A stretch of 64,000 nt of DNA from Vitrella brassicaformis CCMP3155 (Eukaryota > Protista > Chromerida). The notes beneath the pieces were generated by a model that saw only the letters and a program-made list of their open reading frames with translations, searched no databases and was not told the origin of the DNA. The translations under genes were made by a program, and so were the position numbers. Positions 31,101 to 43,374 of this stretch are shown here, in pieces; the first letter of the stretch is position 1; every line of letters begins with the position of its first letter. The DNA is taken from contig CDMY01000365.1 in the NCBI GenBank assembly GCA_001179505.1, positions 35,803 to 99,802 on the forward strand, read 5' to 3'.

Positions 31101-31215
31101 CATTCATGGCGCTCACCGCATCTGTGTCGGGGCGGTGCAGGTGCCTTTGATAGCACGGACAGGCGAGGAACACGATGATGACCAGGCAGCACTGGACGGC
31201 CAAAGATAGTGACAT
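25152..31215 (-). CDS. Very large patatin-like phospholipase (PNPLA8/iPLA2-gamma-like) with signal peptide and duplicated ARM-like modules; spans a 300-N gap
   Basis: C-terminus carries GLRILCLDGGGTRG, GTSTGG (catalytic Ser) and DGALLANNP (catalytic Asp). Upstream exons 31215-~31120, ~31060-30900, ~30775-29582 and 29493 onward join in phase. Leader MSLSLAVQCCLVIIVFLACPC. Confidence 0.85.
29031..29330. other. Assembly gap (300 N); other 300-N gaps at 50426-50725, 53544-53843 and 55080-55379
   Basis: Four N-runs of identical length indicate placeholder gap sizes. Confidence 0.98.
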
Positions 31216-31328
31216 CCGCTGACAGATCTTCATGGCATCTTTGCTCAGATGCCTCCGACACCTCCATCGACGAAAGCAACCATGCGGCGGGATTTTGCGA
31301 GCCGAAATCTGCGAGCTTAGCTGGCAGA

Positions 31329-32748
31329 ATGGGGTGTCTTGTCCTTCTCCTGTTGAGCAGGGCCCATCAAGCCATGCTTCCTCATCAATGGATCATCCTT
31401 TCCTTAGCCACCGCTCATGCTGCCCTTTCAGCATTCATGCCGACGGATGTTCATCCCCACCAGAAGCGGATAAAAGGCCGCTTTCTCTCACACCGACGGA
31501 AGCAGCGTCCCTCGCGCCTTGCACGGGAGCTGCCAGCAGACGACCAAGCAGACGACGGCAGTCACGAATCCACCCATCATCCAGCGACGATGCTCGGCCT
31601 GGTTGTTGGCCCCCCTGTGCAGCTGAGGCTCGCTGCCGTGAAGAGCGTTGCCGCTGCTGACAAGATGACGGCCGACGTGTCCACATCCAAAGGGGAGGCT
31701 GTCTTGAGCACGGGAGTTGTGATGAGTTACTTGAGGACAGAGCCGGCTGTGAGGGATCCACGCAAGCCTCCTCTGGTTTTCGTGCATGGCTCATTCCATG
31801 GCGCATGGTGCTGGGCGGAGCACTGGATGCCGTACTTCTCTCAGCTGGGCTATGAGTGCATCGCCATCAACCTGCGCGGCACTAGCGGCACTCCCGTTCC
31901 TGCCTCTGAGGAAGAAATCAGGTCCATCAAGATAGAGAGGCATGTGGAGGACGTGGCTGATTTGCTTCGCAAGACGGTGCCTGATGGCAACGTGGTGCTC
32001 ATTGGACACTCGTTCGGCTCGATGACCATCCTGAAGCTCCTGGAGCAGGGACTGGTGAGCCCGAAGGGTGTGGCATTGGCGTGTTCAGTTCCGCCATCCG
32101 GAAATGGGCCCATGACTGTGCGCTTCATCCTCCGAAGTGTCGTGGACGCCGTCCAGATCGTTCGGGGGTGAGAGAGAACGTAGAGAGAAGGGAGGGGGGG
32201 AGCAGAGGATGCGTCACCTTCTCCCTTGCTGTCTGCGGTGGCCATGGATCAGGTTTGTGTTCAAGCAGGCGATGACGTCCTGTGCTCTGGCACGGCAGCT
32301 CTTCTTCGACTCAGACATGCCCGAGGAGAAGGTGGAAGCCTACCGCAAGCTCTTCTGCCTTGACGGACAAGTAACAAAGCTAACCACCGAACCGTCCACA
32401 CATCACATGTCACGATATACGTGTCTGTCTGTCTGTCTGTGTCTTCAGATTGGCCTCGACGTGCGTTCGCTATCCGGCAGTCTCCCCTCCCGCCAGGCCC
32501 TCCCCTCCGGCCGTGCATCGTGGCTCGACGAATCGCTGCCGCGACTGGTCATGGGCACGCGCCAAGACTACATAGTTGATGGGCAGGGAGTGGAAGAGAC
32601 GGCCAGGTTCCTGGGCACGGATGCCGTCATGCTGGATGGGGTGCCGCATGATGTTATGCTGGCGTCGGGGGACAGGTGGCGGGCGGGGGCCGAGGCAATC
32701 GCCGAGTGGCTGGAGGGGAAGGTTGTTGCAAGGGCACCAGACAGATGA
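31329..32748 (+). CDS. Alpha/beta-fold hydrolase with bipartite-type targeting leader
   Basis: PPLVFVHGSFHGAWCW, LIGHSFG nucleophile elbow and LDGVPHDVML catalytic His; three exons. Leader MGCLVLLLL...ATAHAALSAF. Confidence 0.88.
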
Positions 32749-33524: not shown

Positions 33525-35981
33525 TTACTGGCAATCCCCCTCATCGAAGCCGCACTGCTCAACATTGCAAACTTCGTCGCATTCTCCGTCGCCGAGCCAC
33601 TCCTCAAAACAGTACACAGCTGCACACGCACCCGATGGAACTGACCCGCCTGATATTTACGCGCACGCACACATACAAACAGCACACACCATGGCTGAGT
33701 GCTCGGTTCTCTGCCTGGATTGCTTTCCCCGTCACTTACTCTCCTCCGGTGGCGGCGTACTGTCCTCGGGTGGCGGCGTCGTGGCGCCCTCACAATCGCC
33801 ATTGTCGAAGTTACACTCTTTGATGTTGCACACGTCATCGCAGATGTCATCCCCAGGCCACCCCATCGCACAATCCAACGGACAGTCGGGCATATCGGCT
33901 GACAGATAAATTCACAGATGCTTAATAGGCAAGTGAGCATCACAAATACACGCGCCTGTCTGACTTGCTCTCTCGCTCTCCTCCCTCCCTCTCTCCCTGC
34001 CTCACGTCTGTCGCAGTCGCCCCCATCGAAATTGCATTCCTCTCTATGGCAGTATTCGTTGCAATAGCCGTCACCTTAATACGAACCACATCACATACAT
34101 GGCCAATCACTCACACAGATCCGCTCCTTAGAAGGAGAGAGTTGTGCTTACCGATTTCCGTCTTAGTGCAGACCATGTACTCATCAAGCTCATCCCTCCA
34201 ACACACCGGCGTCTCGCAGTTGCCGCCATCCATAGCGCACGCGTCGACGGCACATGGCGCGTCACACACGTCGTTCAGCAGCATCTCAACTGCAAGAAAA
34301 GGGGAGCATCAAATAAGATACATTCCATCCGTCTTGTCCCTGCTTTCCTCCCCGCGGTGTCCTATTCGCAGCCCTTACTTGTGCATCCCTCAGCGCAATT
34401 GTGGCAGTCTGGCAACAATGATAACAACGACATAAATCCATGAACACACTCATATATCCGTCATCACGGCGCTGTCTGTGATGCACTTACCGCCGCAGTC
34501 AAAACCGCAGAACTCGTTCAGACAAGCGATTTCACAGATGCCGTCGCCCAGGGAACTGTCGTAACAGCTCGTCGAACACTCACCCTTGCAGTCCCCTCCA
34601 TCACGGTTGCACGCTTCGGTGTTGCACTCTGTGTCGCACTCCCAGTTTCCTACAGGGATCCAACAAACGCACAAACGTAAAGGGTGGCAAATGAAGAGAC
34701 GGCAGGGGTGTGGTGTTCAGACCTAGCTTCTCCTGAGGACAATCGCAGGCAATGTAGTTGAAGGCAGACATTGGCGAGCATATGGCTGCAGTCACACATC
34801 ACACGCAGGTGTTTGGGGGTGGGGGGCGTGCCGTGTGGTTTGGTGCAGCTGATGTCTTACGATTGCGTCCGTTCCATCGAAATCACATTCCTCCACGTTG
34901 CACGCCTCATCGCAGCGCCCATCGTTGATCATTGCAGCCCGCCCATGGATATCCTTCGGGCTGCAGCCAGGCGCACACCAACCTGCACATGACACACACC
35001 CAACGAACACATCCTTCATGGAGATCTACCAGTGATCGTTTCACACCGACCTTCGCAGTCCCCGCCGTCGTTGCCACACGCCTCAACAGCACACGGTCCA
35101 TCGCACCACCGATCGCCGATCCAGTCGTCCGGACACTCGACCTGCAAAGGCACACATACAGCGATGTGGGATGAGTGCGCGTTGCCATAGGACGACAGCC
35201 TCTTGTGTGATGTGCCCGTTCGCTCACCGGACAGTCAGGGTATGGCGATGAGGCGTTGCGGGTCTCCTCCGAAGGTGCGGGTGTGACGTCAGCCTCCTCC
35301 ATGACAGAGGGCGGCACCAGCACACGCTGCAGCAGATGCACATAGCCATCCGTGCCCTGCTGCTCAGAGTCCAACACCACAGGAATGCCACCTTCAAACA
35401 CCCCAACAACACAGACGCATATGAGGCGGCGCTTCAAGTGCATCCTCGCCCATAATATTATCAGCGTGCGTCAACGTACCAACAGTGATGTTATCCCCGT
35501 CGGCGAGGATGGGAAGCATGGATCCCTCGAGTGTCTCGAGTTCGCTGTCGCTCTGTGCGGCCAGTTCCTGTGTGCCGAGTGCGCCCCTCACGACGTGGTA
35601 CTGAAGCACTGCGGTGGCGAGTGCGTCGTCAGTGGCGATCCTCTCGAAGAGGGCCGGGTCGACCTGTGTGACGGCGTCGTCGGTCGGCGCGAACACCGTG
35701 TAGACCTCGCCGGGCTTCAGGTAAGACGCAATGTCGTAGCTCCGCCAGAGGGCCTTGAGTTGGGGCGTGTCGTAGCCATTGTCGATGATGGACAAGACTG
35801 TCTGATCCGTCGTCTCGCCCTCGACCACCTGCAAAAAGCGCCTGCACAGCACACAACGGGCGAATAGACGTCATGCATCTTCCTCACTCTCACTGGCAGA
35901 GATCTCTGACCTTTTTGCTTTCGGGGCGCTCGCACAGACCGCCGCCGCAGACAATAGGAAGAAGGCGCAGAGAACACGCAT
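33525..35981 (-). CDS. Secreted protein: fasciclin (FAS1) domain followed by multiple LNR (Lin-12/Notch) repeats
   Basis: Signal peptide MRVLCAFFLLSAAAVCA; FAS1 motifs YTVFAPTDDA, VLQYHVV and GYVHLLQRVLVP; several LNR units such as CPDDWIGDRWCDGPCAVEACGNDGGDC and CFEEWLGDGECDEVCNVEQCGFDEGDC. Confidence 0.85.
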
Positions 35982-36517
35982 GTTTGGGGAGTGGAAGCCT
36001 CTGAGTGTGGGGGAGGATAGATGAGTCGCGTTCTTTCGCAAGGGGCGGGAAGAGAGGGCAAGAAGACAGAGCCGACGTCTAAGCTCGCGCAGCGATCCCT
36101 TCTCTCTCTTTTTCGAAGTTCTCTCTTTTCTCCCCTTCCCCCAACCGCCGTGGGTGGGATGGATGGAGCGATCGCATGTAGGTAGATCCACTTACAGTGA
36201 TGAGTTGGGCCTGCCAGGGGCTTTGATCAACCTGCCCATAAGATGTACCCACAAGCTTTGTACGCAGACATCTCATGTATCCACAAATACACTAAATATG
36301 CAAAATCACGCCGGCCCAACACAGCAGCAGCTCCTTCACCAAAGCACCCATCTCTCTCCCCAACAGCAGCAACACAGCTCAACGAGTCCTTTTGACGAGT
36401 CCCATACCTGCCCACGTCTCTACCCCTCTCAGGTCCAAAAACGAAAACCGACAGGTGTGTCTGGCAGTACAGGTGTGTTTTCGTACGTGCGTGCCCTCAA
36501 GGCAGAGCATGAATCAA

Positions 36518-38212
36518 TCACAGCTCTCCATTCTGCGCCTCCCGCTCCTCAGTTTCCTGTGGCGGAGGCGTGGTGACTCCCTCACAATCACCGTCGTCGA
36601 AGCCGCACTGCTCGACATTGCATGGTGCATCACATTCACCATCGCCGCGCCAGCCCTCCCCACACGTCAGCGGACACCCCGACTCGTCAGATTGGGCTGG
36701 CACACACACCGAGAGCAAGCACACATATCGACAAACAGGGTCAAGGATCCACTGCCTGTTTCTCACTATTGTCGCAATCACCCCCGTCGTCGTCACACTC
36801 CTCTCGCCTGCACGGCTCGTCGCAAGTGCCATCGCCTGCATGCGACACGCACACATCGCACGAGCCAGCAACCCATACACCCATCCATCTGACGTCAACG
36901 CATGTGTGAGAGGCCGCTGGCTTACCGATCCACTCCCTGAGGCAATAGTCCTCTCTGTCGTTGGGGTCCCTCCAACACTCTGGCGCGCTGCATTTGCCGG
37001 CATCAAAACTGCAGTCCTCCTTGTCACATGCGGGGTCACACACGTCGTTTTGCAGCATCTCAACTGTACAGATGAAGAAGGCAGTAGAACAGAACGAACT
37101 GTTTCATTTATCCATTGTCTGCTTCCCTCCCCGCTGTGAGTGATGTGTGCAGTGCAGCCCCTACGTGTGCATCCCTCAGCGCAGCTCTCGCAGTCTGGCA
37201 ACAATGACAGCACGGAGTGGATAATTATTAAGTGAATCCAGCGGTGTCCATTCAATGCGTCACAGCGCTGTCTGTGTGCACTTACCGCCGCAGTCGAAGT
37301 TGCAGCTTTCCGTCAGGCAGAGCGTGTCACAAGAGCCATCGCCGAGCCAGCCAAGAGCGCAGCCCTCCGAACACTCACCCCTGCAGTCGCCCGCGTCCTG
37401 GTGGCATGCATCCGTATTGCACTCCGAATCGCACACAAAGTTTCCTGCAAAGACATGCTCACACAAACAGAGAGAGGTCTACACGGACGGTGTGAGTACA
37501 ACGCACCCAGCTTCTCGTCAGGACAATCGCAGGCACTGTAGTTGAAGGCAAACAGAGGCTTACATATGGCTGCAATCACACGCACACGAGGTGCTTGGGG
37601 GTGCGGCGCGTGCCGTGCGGTTCGGTGCAGCTGGCAGCTTACGGTCGCAGTCCAGTCCGTCAAAATCACATTGCTCCACGTTGCACGCCTCATCGCAGCG
37701 CCCATTGTTGATCATCGGCGGCTGCTCACCAAATTCTTTCGGGCTGCAGTCAGGCGCACACCAACCTGCAGATGACACACGCACAAGAAACCGCAAACAA
37801 GTCTCCAACCATGATCCCGCTTCTCACACACACCGACCTTCGCAGTCTCCCTTATCGTTGCCACACGCCTCAACAGCACACGGTCCATCGCACCACCCGT
37901 CCCCGATCCAGTCGTCCGGACACTCGACCTGCAAAGGCACACATACAGCGATGTGGGATGAGTGCGCGTTGCCGTATGACGACAGCCTCTTGTGTGATGT
38001 GCCCATTCGCTCACCGGACAGTCAGGGTATGGCGATGAGGCGTTGCGGGCCCCGTCTACCTGTAACCGCCTGCACAAACACACGCATCCAGGCATCATCC
38101 ATTTCTCTCGCTCTGAGTGAGAGATCTCCGACCTTTTTGCTTTCGGCCTGCTCGCACCGGCAACAGCCAGGGCCGCACTCAGAAGCAAGATGCCGCGACA
38201 GAGAGCACGCAT
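36518..38212 (-). CDS. Secreted LNR-repeat protein; tandem paralogue of 33525-35981 lacking FAS1
   Basis: Signal peptide MRALCRGILLLSAALAVAG; shares PKAKRSEIS and RNASSPYPDCP segments, exon layout and LNR units (CPDDWIGDGWCDGPCAVEACGNDKGDC etc.) with the neighbour. Confidence 0.85.
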
Positions 38213-38383
38213 GGGAAGGTTTCAGACGCGAAGATGGATTCGCGCACGAGCGCGCAGAGATGAACCGCTGCGATCTGAAAAATCCGGTGAGACCTCTCCC
38301 GGTTCTCCTCACCGCAGCGGTGAGGTGAGCTACACTCTCTCCGTACCTGTGCTACGGCTAATGACCTACATCTGTTGCTGCTG

Positions 38384-41146
38384 ATGGAGCCTGTGGATTT
38401 CGAGTACCCAACAGCGGGCGGAGTCGGCCGTGAGCTGCTCCGTCAGCTGGCGAGCAGCGGTGGGCAGGGCTCTGACGACGGCCACTCGTCCGACGACGGC
38501 CATTCCTCGTCTGATGACAGCCATGGGGTTCACCATGGGGCCGCTCAAGACGTGCCGTACAGCACACTTGGGGGCTACTTTCTCTTCATCGCCATGGTGC
38601 AGGTGGTGTCGGTGTTTTATCTGTATTACAAGTCGGCCTGCTTCATCGGACACACCAAGATAAACGACCTGAGGTTCGACAAGCGGTTCGACTTGAAGAA
38701 GCCGGGGGCCAAGTCGTTGCCGCCCACCAGATACGTGTGCGTGATTGTGTCCTTCATCGCGGCAATCGAATACACGATCAAGGCCGGCCAGGCCTACGAC
38801 AAGGCCAATGGCGTCGTAAGGATAGACAGACGCACAGACATGCAGAAAGGACAGAATTTCTCTTTGTGTGTGTGTGTGTCAGTTCATCTACTATGACTTC
38901 ACTCACAATATGTACTGGGGCTATGTGGTGCGGACACACACACAGACAGACAGACGGGGGATGAAGAAGAAAGTGGTGTCTCTTGGCGTGTCAGGTGGGA
39001 TGCCCTCTGATCATGGTAGGTAGGGTGACTGACCCACCTACGGACCAATTCACGAAGGAGCAAACACACACAAAGTGCACAGCCGGCCGCCCACTCTCCT
39101 TCCTACCTGCCTGTCCGTCTTTCCATCCAGTATGACTTCACCGAGACACTAAATATGGATGGCTTGATCTTTTTCGCTTCTGGAACATTCGGTGGACTCA
39201 CAATGTGAGCGTCCGAAGGGGAGAAAGAGGATAGACACGAGGGTCGAATTGAGTCGAGACTTTTGTCTGTCTGTCTGCTACAGGGCCAATCTGTCGGAGT
39301 TCATTTGGGGCACCGGGCACTGGGTGTGCTTCTTCTGGGGCGTCTGCATGGTTGGTCTCTCAGTCTATCTGTCACGGACTCGCCTACCTCCCGACTACCT
39401 ATGTGTTGTATCCAGATCGGCACCATCTTCTATCTGCTGATGCAGAGGTGGGCCCAGCCATGCACCAGTATGTCAATTTACTCAGCCGTGCCGGCTGGTG
39501 CTGGGGGGTGTCACAGAGTGTCACAGGTGGTGGGAGTGTGCAGCAAGTACGAGGTCAGCCGGTCAGCGGCGTGGAATCTTCAGTTGGCGGCATTCACCAT
39601 TTTTGCCTCGTGGCCAATCTTCCCACTCTGCTGGTTCATCCGCGATGTAACTAAGAGCACTATGCTCACGTTCCTGGGGCTCTTGTGTATGGGTGTGTTG
39701 CTCTCTGTATGCAGGATCTAGACCCCAGTCACGGCTGGGTGGATTTGTCTGTCATTGAAGTCATTTCCGGCGGTGAGTGTCTGTCTGCTCTGTCTGTCTG
39801 CACAGCCGGACAGACGTATGTGTGTCTGTGTTGCTGCGTGCGCTGTGTCCATATGCAGTTATGGATATCGTGTCGAAGCCCGTGTTCGCCCTCTTCCTTT
39901 GCTGGTACCGCGCTGAGCAGGGTGAGCGACAGAGGAGGATGCCACCAAGCGGCCTTCTCTGCGTGTGTATGTGTGTGGGTGTCTGTTTGCAGAGGAGCTT
40001 CACAAGAAGGAGGTGTTTCAGATGTTGGATTGGATAGCGGGCGATGAGGAGTTGGTCCTGGGCGACGAGAAGGTGGTGCCCGATGAAGTCATCATGGAGA
40101 CAGTCCCTTCAATCATTGTAGTACGTGCACTACCGACGAGAAGTCTTCAAGTCATGTCCCTTACACACTATGTCTCTCTCGCCTTCCTTCCTGCCCGTGC
40201 AGCATTATTCCCACCATCCCCATGGCCCCATGCACGTCGAGAAGGCCAAGAAATGTCAGCCATCCAGCTGCTTGTGTGTCCTTGCTCTCATTATGGCACG
40301 TACCTTGTTGTGTGTCGCAGCCATCCGTACCAAGACAATGAAGTCCAAAGAACTCGACCAAGTGCTGGCCTCCTTCGGCAAGCACGCCCGGCCAGGTTTT
40401 GGCGTCTTCGACGACTTCACCAAGGCCGGCGGCCCCCTCAACCCATACGCCTCCCCATATCCACAATACTTCCCCCCACCACATGGAGCGAACATGCCTC
40501 CCAACGCCTTTTCATCGATGCAGCACGGGAGCCCCTATTATGGAGGCCCGGGACAGGGCCCACCCCCTCCCGTCACGCCGCCAACGAATCCCCAGCAGCA
40601 GCAGCATCAACAGCAGCAGCAAGTCGGTGGGGGCCGTGGTGGAGGGTCACCTCACCAGTCTTCAGGTCTGGACAACGAAGTGGATGCGCTGCGCGCGGAG
40701 ATCGAGAGGCTGCAGGCCAAGGCAGCCGAGAAGTCGGGGCAGCGCATGAGTGGCCACGGGGGCGACAACAACCCACCTGTCACCCCACCACCGTGAGACA
40801 ACCATACAGAGGCCACCCAGGACCCACAGAAGAGGGAACTGATTCCATGATGTGTCTCGCTTGGTCTGTGTGTGTCTGCAGTGACGTGTCTTATAGTCAT
40901 GGTAGCTACAGCGGGCCTTCCTCGGCACTGCCCGTCCATTACGGGGCGGGCTACCCATGGGGCGGCTACTATCCCAATCCGTACTCCATGACACAGCATC
41001 AGCTTCTGATGTTACGTATGTCGACAAATGTGCCATCGATGTGCTGCGCCTGTCACTTGCTTATGGACCGTCCAAATGGGCGAGTAGTATCCTGCCTGCA
41101 CACATGCAGGCAGACATACCTGTTCTGCCTGTTTAGGCATCAGTAG
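38384..41146 (+). CDS. Microbial (type-1) rhodopsin, channelrhodopsin-like (KCR/BCCR-type), with long low-complexity C-terminal tail; 3' end approximate
   Basis: Exons 38384-38815, 38883-38927, 38995-39015, 39131-39204, 39284-39350, 39416-39447, ~39545-39646, 39715-39772 and 39859-39921 splice in phase into 7 hydrophobic helices. Helix C reads MYWGYVVGCPLIMYDF, helix F SWPIFPLCW and helix G VMDIVSKPVFALFL (retinal Lys codon 39876-39878). Confidence 0.85.
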
Positions 41147-41517
41147 ATGCCATATGCCATATTGGCACATTTATTCGTTTCTCCTCCCTCGTATGCACTG
41201 CACTTTGTAACAGAGAAGAGAGTGTCGTCTATCACGAATGTGTGTGCGAGGCCAGTTTGGCTCGCTCTGCTCGTGATTACGGGTAGCGAGGGTGCTAGCT
41301 TCATATGTTGCGTATCGATTTGCTAGAAGTGCTTGTGGGGCTGTGCTTATCTATCGCGTAGAGTGTAGCGGGTGGGTGTGGGCAGACCTTTGCAGATTGA
41401 AGGCCAACCAAGCACAGACAGACAGACAGACAGAAGTAAAGTCCGCATATACAAGGATCGTGTGTTGCGGTCATGCACGTGTGGCTCGTCCTTTATAAAT
41501 CGTCATCACACACCATC

Positions 41518-41540
41518 ACACACACACACACACACACACA
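41518..41540. repeat. (CA)n microsatellite, representative of many (CA)n/(GACA)n/(CACAC)n tracts in introns and spacers
   Basis: Directly visible; similar tracts at 4004-4028, 13801-13830, 19275-19296, 43375-43410 and 48618-48658. Confidence 0.9.
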
Positions 41541-41835
41541 CAGGGACACGCACGTGGACACACTTGAAAAGAATGCATGCACTTGAAAAAAAGTGGCGAC
41601 TGCGTCGGCTAGCCCACAAACCTGCGAAACGACCACTGATGGCTGCTGCTGCTGCTGGTGTACCCATACATAAGATGAGACGTTGCACAAAACGCGTCAA
41701 ACGTCGTGTACGTAGTACCATACGAAAAACGCCTCAGTGCATCCATGGATAACCGCTAACCAACCAACCAATCAACCAAAACAAGCAACTGCAGTCCTAC
41801 CTATGACTTACACTCTAGAACTGGAGACAATTTTA

Positions 41836-43374
41836 TCACTCCTCACCCAGAGAAAAGTCGTCGAGCTGAAAATGGTCGACCGCGTCCTCAAGATTCACAG
41901 CAAGTGCCCTCATCCCCTCGCTGTCCCGTATGTAAGGCGGCGTGGGGATGCCCCCCCTGCCCACACTCCTTTCCTCAGCCGACCTGCTGTCGTCGCCTGT
42001 CGCAACGTTGTTGGCCTCAATGGTCTCTGTGGCCATCGACTCGAACCGCGATGCCAGGTTGGTCCTCGTCTGCTCGAGTGCCATCCTGGTGTCCTGTCTC
42101 TGCTGGTCCGCTCTCCCCCCGTCGCATGACGAGCTGTCGGGCTCGTTCTCTCTTGTTGTGTGTATGGTGTCCTCGGTCTTGAAGGTTATCGACATGCGCT
42201 TCTTGCTGGACTTTTTGCTGACGCCGTGTGTCATCCTTGCAGCATCACCACCAGCGGCGGCGCGGCTGGGTGTCTCGTCAGGTGGTGCCCGGTACTTGTG
42301 TGCGGCTGATGGCTCCGAGACGGTATCGGGATTGGAGTCGTTGTCTGCTGCCGCGTGTGAGAGGCCTGAGGCCTGTTTAGTTGTGTCCGGCTTGGACGTG
42401 AGGCGGGACATCTGCCCGGTCCCCTCGCGAGACATGAATGCCGACATCGCCATGCTCTCGTCGTCAGCCAGATTCAAAAACATCTGAAAACGAGAAGAGA
42501 CGAGACATTCTTTGGGTGCTTGGCGGTGGTCGACCGACGGCGTGCGTACCCTATCGTCTCCTTCGCTGAATCGTTTGGACGTGGCCTTCTTGCGCAGCTC
42601 GGGCGATGTGGTCACCTCCTTTTTATAGTGCCGGTAGGCGCCCATGATGCTGTCCTGCGCGTGAAGCTGCACTTTGGCTGACACGCAGACAGACGGACAC
42701 ACGCATCCAGGAGTGCGCTCTATGTGTGTGTGCTTACACATTTGTGACGGTGCCCTGATCCAGCCCAGTCTCTTGAGTGATCCTGTGTTGAGCGCCTCGA
42801 CAGATATCAGCCGCAGCGTGTCGATCACCTGCACCACGCGGCGAGAGAGGCACGACATCCATACAGTGAAGCTTGCAACAATTGTTGTGGTTGTCGGTCG
42901 AGCGAGTTGACTGGTTGCGTGACCTTTTCCCTGTCGATTGGGTTGAGATTAAAGATGAAGCTCTCGACTTCGTCTTCGCTCATCTTGGCGCACATGGCAA
43001 TGTAGTCACGGAATATCCTGCTCACGGTCATCACCTGCACACACACACACACACAGAGCCAGTCAACTACGTCCACAACAGTTCTCTCCGCCACTGTTGT
43101 GGACAGACCTTGTTGACAACAGGTGTGTGGTGTCTGACCTTCAGTTCATCGTATCCGGGTCGCTTCATCTTGAGGAACCGCCGACACGCGTAGCAGAAGG
43201 CGATGAAAAGCGCCAGGAAGGGGCCGTACGCGGTAAACATCATGAAGCCCTCAAACACCGTCTTGTGCGGGTTCTCCTGCGGTGTGAAAATGGGCACGAA
43301 ATACGAGAGTGCGACGAGACAGCTCAGGAGAAACATCTCCAACACGTTGTAGACCTTGTGCGGCCCTGCCAACA

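What the first reader, a model, noticed from the sequence alone, without database searches (positions are those of the whole stretch)
38384..39990. Hidden multi-exon channelrhodopsin-like opsin resembling kalium (K+) channelrhodopsins, with a rewired helix-C motif
Seen: nine short exons, one only 21 nt, splice in phase into a 7-TM protein with the retinal Lys (DIVSK). No single ORF in the track shows it. Knowledge (recalled HcKCR1 sequence): it matches block by block, DVPYSTLG~DMDYPLLG, EYTIKA~MYAAKS, YWGYVVGCPLIMYDFTETLNM~YLDYVFTCPLLILDFAFTLDL, SWPIFP~FWPMFP and MDIVSKPVF...YRAEQEE~LDLTCKSIF...FRLELEE. Inference: the D-T-D motif of this group (D105/T109/D116) becomes G-G-D, and the K+ filter positions W102 and Y222 become M and E. 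That predicts one lost counterion and a different selectivity or spectrum, so it may be a new channel variant or a sensory rhodopsin.
Basis: partly seen in the sequence, partly recalled or inferred. Interest (0 to 1): 0.9.

Follow-up and report, generated by a model that had tools for sequence, protein, structure and literature searches.

The report
Unannotated chromerid channelrhodopsin gene
A real, expressed 13-exon gene encodes a light-sensitive (retinal-binding) membrane protein of the small chromerid branch of channelrhodopsins; its odd helix-C motif was already published for its Chromera relatives, so this is a new and divergent member, not a new kind.

Summary
Nine GT-AG exons in 38384-39921, one of only 21 nt, join in phase. 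They belong to a 13-exon, 612-aa gene ending at 41146.

Transcript contigs from three public runs match the joints. One acceptor differs from my first manual model: exon 7 starts at 39517, not 39544, which adds nine residues.

An exhaustive search of 1.84 billion proteins with exon 1 found only five relatives: four Chromera velia proteins and one from an unnamed run. The window's product is 38-40% identical to them and aligns across every junction. No protein holding exon 1 was found, so the gene is probably unannotated.

The family profile matches solved B1ChR2, HcKCR1/2, HcCCR, ChRmine and GtCCR2, and no ACR or green-algal ChR. One homologue, Cvel_21397, is among three C. velia sequences that Govorunova et al. 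(2022) placed with the KCRs. They had already noted the non-carboxylate at Asp85 and the Gly at Thr89. Their ChvCCR1 is a Na+-permeable, non-K+-selective channel.

Here the G157/G161/D168 motif, the Lys293 and Asp289 pair and the D168/T172/R304 inner constriction are present. The aromatic K+ filter is absent (M154, I281, E282, S285).

Best reading: a light-gated, non-K+-selective cation channel. It is a new member of a known kind. Function is untested.

The parts
38384..38815 (+). Coding exon 1 (aa 1-144). It holds the start codon, an acidic/His/Ser-rich N-terminal tail (aa 1-55), TM1 and TM2 (D139 = HcKCR D87).
   Evidence: There is an in-frame stop at 38321 upstream within the same RNA-supported exon. 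The donor GT is at 38816. tblastn hits of all five homologues fall on 38549-38812.
38883..38927 (+). Exon 2 (45 nt, aa 145-159). First half of TM3, with M154 (W102/BR R82 site) and G157 (BR D85 site).
   Evidence: Canonical splice sites. The YWGY motif is invariant in the homologues. The length is consistent with the 237-nt gap in the RNA contigs.
38995..39015 (+). Exon 3 (21 nt, VGCPLIM, aa 160-166). Holds G161 (BR T89 site), C162 and P163.
   Evidence: Canonical AG and GT. GCPLI is invariant in the family. The length sum matches the RNA contigs.
39131..39204 (+). Exon 4 (74 nt). End of TM3, with D168 (D116/BR D96 site) and T172 (T120 site), then TM4.
   Evidence: (tblastn 39125-39205).
39284..39350 (+). 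Exon 5 (67 nt). End of TM4 and start of TM5.
39416..39447 (+). Exon 6 (32 nt). TM5.
39517..39646 (+). Exon 7 (130 nt). TM5-TM6 loop and TM6 (W256, F259, P260, W263). The acceptor is at 39517, not 39544.
   Evidence: RNA contig pieces start at 39515, with 2 nt ambiguous against the end of exon 6, in X1, X6 and X7. The nine extra residues align with the homologues.
39715..39772 (+). Exon 8 (58 nt). TM6-TM7 loop (DDLDPSHG) and start of TM7, with I281, E282 (Y222 site) and S285 (H225 site).
39859..39921 (+). Exon 9 (63 nt). TM7 with D289 (BR D212 / HcKCR D229), retinal Lys K293 and R304 (R244 site).
   Evidence: tblastn hits fall on 39801-39920.
39993..40120 (+). Exon 10 (128 nt). Conserved post-TM7 helix (EELHKKEVFQMLDW) and the VPxEV...TVPxxx motif shared with the Chromera homologues.
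   Evidence: RNA contig piece 39992-40120. Alignment. The same helix aligns to the ChRmine C-terminal helix for P0001.
40203..40254 (+). Exon 11 (52 nt).
   Evidence: The 52-nt unaligned stretch in RNA contigs X6 and X7 equals this exon. Canonical sites.
40321..40792 (+). Exon 12 (472 nt). Pro/Tyr/Gln-rich linker and a predicted coiled-coil segment (LDNEVDALRAEIERLQAKAAE).
   Evidence: RNA contig piece 40321-40792. The homologues carry comparable P/Y-rich and helical segments. No Pfam domain matched.
40882..41146 (+). Coding part of exon 13, with the stop codon ending at 41146. The exon runs on as 3' UTR to at least 41505.
   Evidence: RNA contig piece 40882-41505 in X1, X6 and X7. Translation.

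Best explanation
The locus is an expressed gene of 13 coding exons (38384-41146, + strand). It encodes a 612-aa type-1 (microbial) rhodopsin of the small chromerid branch of the 'pump-like'/BCCR-KCR channelrhodopsin family. That branch contains Chromera velia ChvCCR1.

Shown here:
- The splice model and its transcription.
- Seven TM helices.
- The retinal Lys (K293) and the TM7 Asp (D289).
- Family membership.

Inferred mechanism:
- All-trans retinal binds K293 as a protonated Schiff base, stabilised by D289 alone. The helix-C acceptor site (BR D85 / HcKCR D105) is Gly157, and the BR R82 site is Met154.
- Light isomerises the retinal and opens a passive cation pathway.
- The cytoplasmic constriction (D168, T172, R304) is the same as the D116/T120/R244 site of HcKCR1.
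- The extracellular aromatic size filter of KCRs (W102, F/Y221, Y222, H225) is replaced by M154, I281, E282 and S285. E282 matches ChRmine E246.
- The channel should therefore pass Na+/H+ without K+ selectivity, like ChvCCR1.
- Without the D105-type acceptor, Schiff-base deprotonation and gating must run differently from KCRs.

The conserved post-TM7 helix, the VPxEV/TVP motif and the C-terminal coiled coil probably anchor or cluster the receptor. The likely role is a photoreceptor current in the flagellate stage. That role is inference only.
For: Splice model and RNA:
- Canonical sites and phases.
- Transcript contigs from three runs whose piece ends and gap lengths match the model.

Family membership:
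- Exhaustive phmmer with exon 1 finds only five proteins, E 1e-14 to 2e-5. Four are C. velia proteins, including Cvel_21397.
- The full model matches them at E 2e-83 to 5e-63, colinear across all junctions.
- 57 of 73 family-invariant columns are kept.
- The homologues pass the Pfam Bac_rhodopsin gathering score.

Placement:
- The family profile against the PDB gives B1ChR2 2.9e-19, HcKCR2 6.6e-14, ChRmine 1.2e-13, HcKCR1 2e-10, HcCCR 3e-10 and GtCCR2 1e-6. No ACR or chlorophyte ChR appears at E<=10.
- Foldseek of a homologue's model ranks B1ChR2 and HcKCR1 first, TM-score up to 0.86.
- The top Atlas feature hit is a 'ChRmine family' cluster, score 0.89, which the tool rates as a lead only.

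Residue mapping.

Literature:
- The C. velia members cluster with the HcKCRs and have a non-carboxylate at D85 and Gly at T89. ChvCCR1 shows passive, Na+-permeable, non-K+-selective photocurrents. Both W102 and Y222 are needed for K+ selectivity (PMC9765531).
- D229 is the dark-state counterion, D105 the proton acceptor, and D116-R244/T120 the inner site (10.1101/2022.10.30.514430).
Against: - No functional data exist for this protein.
- It is the most divergent family member: branch length about 1.5 substitutions per site and 38-40% identity.
- It has lost the His (H225 site) that is invariant in the other five.
- One homologue (Cvel_21397) expressed poorly and gave no current, and another gave only small currents.
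- A neutral residue at the D85 site is otherwise typical of anion channelrhodopsins (PMC12448745).
- The short exons are confirmed in RNA by length only.
- I did not have the ChvCCR1 sequence itself, so relatedness to it rests on Cvel_21397 being in the same published C. velia group.
- No phylogeny against other ChR families was computed here.
Confidence: 0.6

Rival explanations
1. It is a light-gated anion channel. With no carboxylate at the D85 site and no Arg at the R82 site, the pore could favour Cl-, as in ACRs.
For: G157 sits at the D85 site. All known ACRs carry a non-carboxylate there (PMC12448745). Vitrella is known to encode an ACR, VbACR2, though of another family (PMC10147648).
Against: - The characterised member of this family with the same motif (ChvCCR1) conducts Na+.
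- The profile finds no ACR structure at E<=10.
- The cation-binding D116/T120/R244 triad is conserved, and the outer vestibule gains an acidic E282.
- NlCCR shows that a neutral D85 site does not imply anion selectivity.
Confidence: 0.12
2. It is a retinal-binding photosensor that does not conduct ions itself. It would signal through its conserved cytoplasmic tail (post-TM7 helix, VPxEV/TVP motif, coiled coil).
For: About 300 residues follow TM7, with motifs conserved between genera. Cvel_21397 gave no photocurrents. The window's protein is a long branch that has lost His225 and the G288-site Gly.
Against: Long C-terminal tails are usual in bona fide channelrhodopsins (my own knowledge). The lack of current in Cvel_21397 was attributed to very poor expression. 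The pore-lining D168/T172/R304 are kept. No known signalling domain was detected in the tail.
Confidence: 0.2
3. It is a decaying or non-functional paralogue. It would be transcribed but no longer under selection as a photoreceptor.
For: The longest branch in the family. Sixteen of 73 invariant positions are changed. The last ~50 residues are Cys-rich and look odd.
Against: All 12 introns are cleanly spliced and the frame is open for 612 codons. K293, D289, the WPxFP motif, C162-P163, D168 and R304 are all intact. The tail motifs are conserved.
Confidence: 0.06

Closest known systems
Chromera velia channelrhodopsin homologues (ChvCCR1 = Cvel_28437, Cvel_30056, Cvel_21397; also Cvel_23720, Cvel_14508, Cvel_9532)
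   Same: Same family: blastp E down to 2e-83 and 38-40% identity over the 7TM plus post-TM7 region. Shared features are the invariant YWGY-xx-GCPLI helix-C motif (Gly at the D85 and T89 sites, Asp at D96), D(I/V)(V/I)SK in TM7, the ExLHxK helix, the VPxEV...TVP motif and a P/Y-rich tail with a coiled coil.
   Different: It is the most divergent member. The His at the H225 site, invariant in the others, is Ser285, and the Gly before the TM7 Asp is Met288. It has a unique 55-aa acidic/His-rich N-terminal tail. It comes from a GC-richer genome (~56-60%). It was not found in the protein collections searched.
Kalium channelrhodopsins HcKCR1/HcKCR2 and B1ChR2 (PDB 8h86, 8h87, 8jxo)
   Same: They are among the best solved-structure matches by profile (2e-10, 6.6e-14, 2.9e-19) and by fold. 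Shared residues are D87, Y106, C110-P111, D116, T120, WPxFP, D229, K233 and R244, plus the FRLELEE-like end of TM7.
   Different: The aromatic K+ filter is absent: W102 becomes M154, F/Y221 becomes I281, Y222 becomes E282 and H225 becomes S285. The proton acceptor D105 becomes G157, T109 becomes G161 and K84 becomes Q136. By the published criteria K+ selectivity is not expected.
Cryptophyte BCCRs / pump-like ChRs (ChRmine, GtCCR2, GtCCR4)
   Same: Profile E-values are 1.2e-13 (ChRmine) and 1e-6 (GtCCR2). Glu at the ChRmine E246 position is shared (E282). The post-TM7 helix aligns with the ChRmine C-terminal helix.
   Different: ChRmine keeps the full DTD motif and R112, whereas here the motif is GGD and the Arg site is Met.
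Vitrella brassicaformis 'Colpodellida ChRs' CEL94649 and VbACR2 (CEM28120)
   Same: They are channelrhodopsin-like proteins from a chromerid with a non-carboxylate at the D85 site.
   Different: They form a separate family. The authors' tree, which includes HcKCR1/2 and GtCCR1-4, places them apart. VbACR2 has Gln128 and Asp257. CEL94649 has a carboxylate only at Glu96 among the three counterion sites. Here the residues are Gly157 and Asp289, so the window's gene is neither of them.

Membership tests
Type-1 (microbial) rhodopsin | Seven TM helices with a retinal-binding Lys in TM7 and the Asp four residues before it | tested here: met
   K293 and D289 lie in DIVSK. Five of the seven TMs stand out in a coarse Kyte-Doolittle scan. 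The seven-TM count rests on gap-free alignment to the homologues and on the seven helices of the P0001 model. The homologues pass the Pfam PF01036 gathering score. The exons are too short to score singly.
Type-1 (microbial) rhodopsin | Retinal-pocket aromatic residues in TM6 (BR W182, Y185/F, P186, W189) | tested here: met
   W256, F259, P260 and W263 in SWPIFPLCW, aligned to HcKCR2 FWPLFP.
Pump-like / BCCR-KCR channelrhodopsin clade | Closer in sequence and fold to ChRmine, GtCCR, HcKCR and B1ChR2 than to other rhodopsins | tested here: met
   Profile against the PDB. Foldseek. Published tree for Cvel_21397 = P0003. No tree with outgroups was computed here.
Pump-like / BCCR-KCR channelrhodopsin clade | DTD motif in TM3 (BR D85, T89, D96) | tested here: not met
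   The motif is G157, G161, D168. The same deviation is invariant in the five homologues and is published for C. velia.
Pump-like / BCCR-KCR channelrhodopsin clade | Light-gated passive ion conductance | not testable with these tools
   It has been shown only for the family member ChvCCR1, in the literature.
Kalium channelrhodopsins (K+-selective) | Aromatic extracellular filter: homologues of both W102 and Y222 present (plus F/Y221 and H225) | tested here: not met
   The residues are M154, E282, I281 and S285. The criterion comes from PMC9765531 and 10.1101/2022.10.30.514430.
Kalium channelrhodopsins (K+-selective) | Cytoplasmic D116-R244 salt bridge with T120 | tested here: met
   D168, R304 and T172, by alignment.
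Chromerid ChvCCR-type family | YWGY-xx-GCPLI helix C, D(I/V)(V/I)SKP in TM7, ExLHxK helix and VPxEV...TVP tail motif; significant full-length similarity | tested here: met
   (57 of 73 invariant columns kept).
Anion channelrhodopsins | Non-carboxylate at the BR D85 site | tested here: met
   G157. The feature is necessary but not sufficient (NlCCR and ChvCCR1).
Anion channelrhodopsins | Homology to a known ACR family (cryptophyte, MerMAID, prasinophyte, labyrinthulean, ancyromonad, VbACR2) | tested here: not met
   No ACR chain is among the 49 PDB matches at E<=10. Only solved structures could be compared.

The most novel reading that the evidence does not exclude
This most divergent member differs from ChvCCR1 at key sites: Glu at the Y222 site, Ser instead of the family-invariant His225, Met at the R82/W102 site, and D289 as the only carboxylate at the Schiff base. 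It may therefore not behave like ChvCCR1. It could have a distinct selectivity (anion, proton or divalent), or an unusual photocycle without a helix-C acceptor. It could also act as a non-conducting sensor that signals through the conserved cytoplasmic helix and coiled-coil module.
Probability: 0.2. Interest if true: 0.6.

Novelty: new member of a known kind. Interest (0 to 1): 0.38.

Why it matters
It adds a transcribed and apparently unannotated member from a second genome to a very small channelrhodopsin branch. Only five relatives turned up among 1.84 billion representative proteins. That branch sits beside the K+-selective KCRs used in optogenetics.

The member keeps the inner D116/T120/R244 site but has none of the aromatic filter and no helix-C proton acceptor. 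It is therefore a natural test case for two questions: how gating works without that acceptor, and what the outer vestibule contributes to selectivity.

It also shows that very short exons (21-45 nt) can hide 7TM genes from ORF-based or automatic annotation in this genome.

The family and its odd motif are already in the literature, so a specialist would not be surprised.

Tried and rejected
- Exon 1 alone against the PDB gave no hit at E<=10, because TM1-2 are too divergent. The family profile was needed.
- The three word-index protein searches returned only P0001, P0002 and P0004. They missed even P0003 and P0005, so they say nothing about absence.
- The metagenome scan with the family motifs gave 169 pattern hits and no relative.
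- Acceptor 39544 for exon 7 is in frame and was in my first model. I rejected it because the RNA contigs start at 39515/39517 and the homologues have the nine extra residues.
- The upstream pieces 37674-37763 and 37836-37926, joined to the opsin in contig X7 record 17, looked like 5' UTR exons. Their introns are GT-AG only on the minus strand, so they belong to a head-to-head neighbour. The contig merges two overlapping transcripts.
- I considered identity with the published Vitrella ChRs (CEL94649, VbACR2) and rejected it on the counterion residues.
- No genomic record of P0002 was available, so intron positions could not be compared.
- A bacterial promoter/terminator scan is irrelevant to a eukaryotic gene.
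It could therefore not go to the remote tools (structure prediction, exact look-up, Pfam). I analysed it locally and through its homologues.
Full report

The window is GC-rich eukaryotic DNA, about 55-66% GC over most of its length. Three-frame translation of 38300-40700 shows rhodopsin-like peptide blocks in alternating frames. I joined them at canonical sites only.

The coding exons are:

| Exon | Coordinates |
|---|---|
| 1 | 38384-38815 |
| 2 | 38883-38927 |
| 3 | 38995-39015 (21 nt) |
| 4 | 39131-39204 |
| 5 | 39284-39350 |
| 6 | 39416-39447 |
| 7 | 39517-39646 |
| 8 | 39715-39772 |
| 9 | 39859-39921 |
| 10 | 39993-40120 |
| 11 | 40203-40254 |
| 12 | 40321-40792 |
| 13 | 40882-41146 (stop) |

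Every intron (65-115 nt) is GT...AG and the phases match. The total is 1839 nt, or 612 codons plus the stop.

**2. Transcription**

A search of public runs found several that hold the stretch. Two of them hold about 0.41 of the sampled words, which is what exon-only sequence would give. I laid four runs on 37600-41900.

- Contig X7 record 17 (2718 nt) and X6 record 14 (2322 nt) have pieces that end at 38815 and resume at 39515-39646, 39992-40120, 40321-40792 and 40882-41505.
- The record stretches too short for the aligner to place are 237, 120 and 52 nt.
- These equal exons 2-6 (239 nt, less 2 nt shared with the next piece), exons 8-9 (121 nt, less 1) and exon 11 (52 nt).
- X1 record 2 shows the same 120-nt gap.
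- X5 carries intron-containing pieces and behaves like DNA.

The spliced form therefore exists as RNA-derived contigs in three runs. The short exons are supported by exact length and by homology, not by their read sequence.

Exon 7 starts at 39517, not at the also in-frame 39544. This adds nine residues, RVSQVVGVC.

**3. Start of the gene and the neighbour**

The exon that carries the ATG is continuous in RNA back to at least 38291 (X6). It has an in-frame stop at 38321, so the ORF cannot extend upstream.

The further 'upstream exons' in X7 record 17 (37674-37763, 37836-37926) have GT-AG introns only on the minus strand. They belong to a head-to-head neighbour. Its ATG is at 38212 and opens a signal-peptide-like sequence. 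The two start codons are 171 nt apart.

**4. Relatives**

phmmer with exon 1 against 1.84 billion representative proteins found five proteins and no more.

- Four are uncharacterised Chromera velia proteins: Cvel_23720, Cvel_14508, Cvel_21397 and Cvel_9532.
- One comes from a Logan assembly of run SRR2971404, on a contig of 40% GC.

No hit is identical or near-identical to exon 1. A protein containing this exon is therefore not in that collection. This supports 'hidden/unannotated', with the caveat that I could not look up the spliced product itself.

Locally, the 612-aa model matches the five at E 2e-83 to 5e-63 over about 325 residues. The alignment is colinear and has no gaps at any exon junction. 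57 of 73 family-invariant columns are kept.

tblastn of the five against the window hits only 38549-40117, in exon order, so there is no second copy here.

In a six-sequence tree the window's protein is the longest branch, at 38-40% identity to the Chromera paralogues.

**5. What family?**

The homologues pass the Pfam Bac_rhodopsin threshold. The profile of the five against all PDB sequences gave:

| Solved structure | E-value |
|---|---|
| B1ChR2 | 2.9e-19 |
| HcKCR2 | 6.6e-14 |
| ChRmine | 1.2e-13 |
| HcKCR1 | 2e-10 |
| HcCCR | 3e-10 |
| GtCCR2 | 1e-6 |
| Acetabularia rhodopsins | 3e-4 |

No GtACR1, C1C2, ChR2 or Chrimson chain appears at E<=10.

An AlphaFold model of the P0001 domain has mean pLDDT 70.5 and seven TM helices plus a long TM7 extension. 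Foldseek ranks B1ChR2 and HcKCR1 first, with TM-score up to 0.86. The ESM Atlas feature search puts a 'ChRmine family' cluster first, at a score of 0.89 that the tool rates as a lead only.

**6. Residue mapping**

HcKCR2 chain 8h87 is printed with native numbering. Combined with the family alignment and indexing, the mapping is:

| HcKCR (BR) site | Model residue |
|---|---|
| D87 | D139 |
| K84 | Q136 |
| N99 | T151 |
| W102 (BR R82) | M154 |
| D105 (BR D85) | G157 |
| Y106 | Y158 |
| T109 (BR T89) | G161 |
| C110 | C162 |
| D116 (BR D96) | D168 |
| T120 | T172 |
| F/Y221 | I281 |
| Y222 | E282 |
| H225 | S285 |
| D229 (BR D212) | D289 |
| K233 | K293 |
| R244 | R304 |

Its TM2 block is out of register by three residues relative to HMMER's ungapped alignment.

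**7. What is already known**

Govorunova et al. 2022 (PMC9765531) found three C. velia sequences: Cvel_28437, Cvel_21397 and Cvel_30056.

- The three cluster with the H. catenoides KCRs.
- They carry a non-carboxylate at the Asp85 position and, 'very unusually', Gly at Thr89.
- Cvel_28437 (ChvCCR1) gives voltage-reversing, inwardly rectifying photocurrents with substantial Na+ permeability and no K+ selectivity.
- Cvel_30056 gives smaller currents.
- Cvel_21397 (my P0003) expressed very poorly and gave none.
- The paper also shows that the W102 and Y222 homologues are both required for K+ selectivity.

Tajima et al. (bioRxiv 10.1101/2022.10.30.514430) report on HcKCR1:

- D229 is the dark-state counterion.
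- D105 is the proton acceptor of the M state and is important for gating.
- W102, F/Y221, Y222 and H225 form the aromatic size filter.
- D116, T120 and R244 form the cytoplasmic ion site.
- ChRmine has E246 where the KCRs have Y222.

Kojima et al. 2023 (PMC10147648) characterised two Vitrella 'Colpodellida ChRs', CEL94649 and VbACR2. These form a separate family and have different counterion residues (Gln128/Asp257, and Glu96 only). The window's gene is neither of them.

I found no paper that describes a member of the ChvCCR-type family outside C. velia.

**8. Mechanism**

Shown here: the protein has the retinal Lys, the TM7 Asp, the TM6 aromatic pocket, the Cys-Pro of helix C and the KCR-type cytoplasmic triad.

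Inferred:
- It binds retinal, with D289 as the sole counterion.
- It opens a passive cation pathway on illumination.
- It lacks K+ selectivity, because none of the four filter residues is aromatic or His. E282 makes the outer vestibule ChRmine-like.
- Its Schiff-base deprotonation and gating must bypass the missing helix-C acceptor.

The post-TM7 helix also aligns with the ChRmine C-terminal helix. The VPxEV...TVP motif and the coiled coil are conserved between genera. No Pfam domain matches them. A scaffolding or clustering role is a guess.

Rivals are an anion channel, a non-conducting sensor, and a decaying paralogue. They are weighed in their own sections.

**9. Source organism**

The tools code the organism names. 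Three observations bear on the source:
- The GC content.
- The all-Chromera homologues at only about 40% identity.

They point to a chromerid other than C. velia. Vitrella brassicaformis is the obvious candidate. This is inference and was not tested.

**10. Verdict**

The 'rewired' motif is family-wide and was published in 2022, and a family member has been characterised as a non-selective cation channel.

What is new:
- A divergent, expressed and apparently unannotated member in a second genome.
- Its exact 13-exon structure.
- Its particular vestibule residues (M154, E282, S285).

It is a new member of a known kind, of moderate interest.

Noticed in passing
window 37674-38254, minus strand: A head-to-head neighbour gene has its ATG at 38212 and a signal-peptide-like start (MRALCRGILLLSAALAVAGA). 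Its introns are GT-AG on the minus strand (37764-37835, and 37927-38131 holding an unplaced ~56-nt exon). The two start codons are only 171 nt apart. Unstranded RNA contigs merge the two transcripts, so their 5' ends overlap or abut.
   Followed up: partly
window 36518-37255 (-) and 35394-35852 (-): Minus-strand ORFs carry an LNR/Notch domain (Pfam E 9e-6) and a fasciclin (FAS1) domain (E 6e-16). They are probably exons of one or two secreted-protein genes upstream of the opsin.
   Followed up: partly
window 37700-38050 vs 34917-35262; 38064-38213 vs 35836-35982: The 5' region of the minus-strand neighbour is duplicated about 2.8 kb away, at 85% and 72% identity. This suggests a tandem pair of paralogous genes or a repeated promoter and first-exon module.
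   Followed up: partly
window 31209-32171 (+): A long ORF has an alpha/beta-hydrolase fold (Pfam Abhydrolase_1, E 4e-16).
   Followed up: no
window 38450-38530 (aa 23-50 of the opsin): The N-terminal extracellular tail holds three SDDGHSS-like repeats, acidic and His-rich. All five homologues lack them. The function is unknown.
   Followed up: no
window 38853-38887, 38930-38960, 41414-41434, 41506-41554: Introns and the 3' UTR carry (GT)n/(CA)n and CAGA-type microrepeats. These attract very many unrelated contigs in read laying (depth spikes and false 'joints'). Depth there is uninformative.
   Followed up: no
L001 (Logan contig of run SRR2971404, 1643 nt, 40% GC): A fifth family member (P0005, 429 aa) comes from an unnamed organism with much lower GC than the window. 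It has Ala in place of Ser before the retinal Lys (DIIAK). The family therefore probably reaches beyond the window's organism and Chromera.
   Followed up: partly
PMC9765531 text vs P0003: [quoted passage not shown] In Cvel_21397 and all relatives the Gly precedes a retained Cys-Pro (G-C-P). The Gly therefore sits at T89 and the Cys at T90. This is a small numbering ambiguity in the literature.
   Followed up: yes
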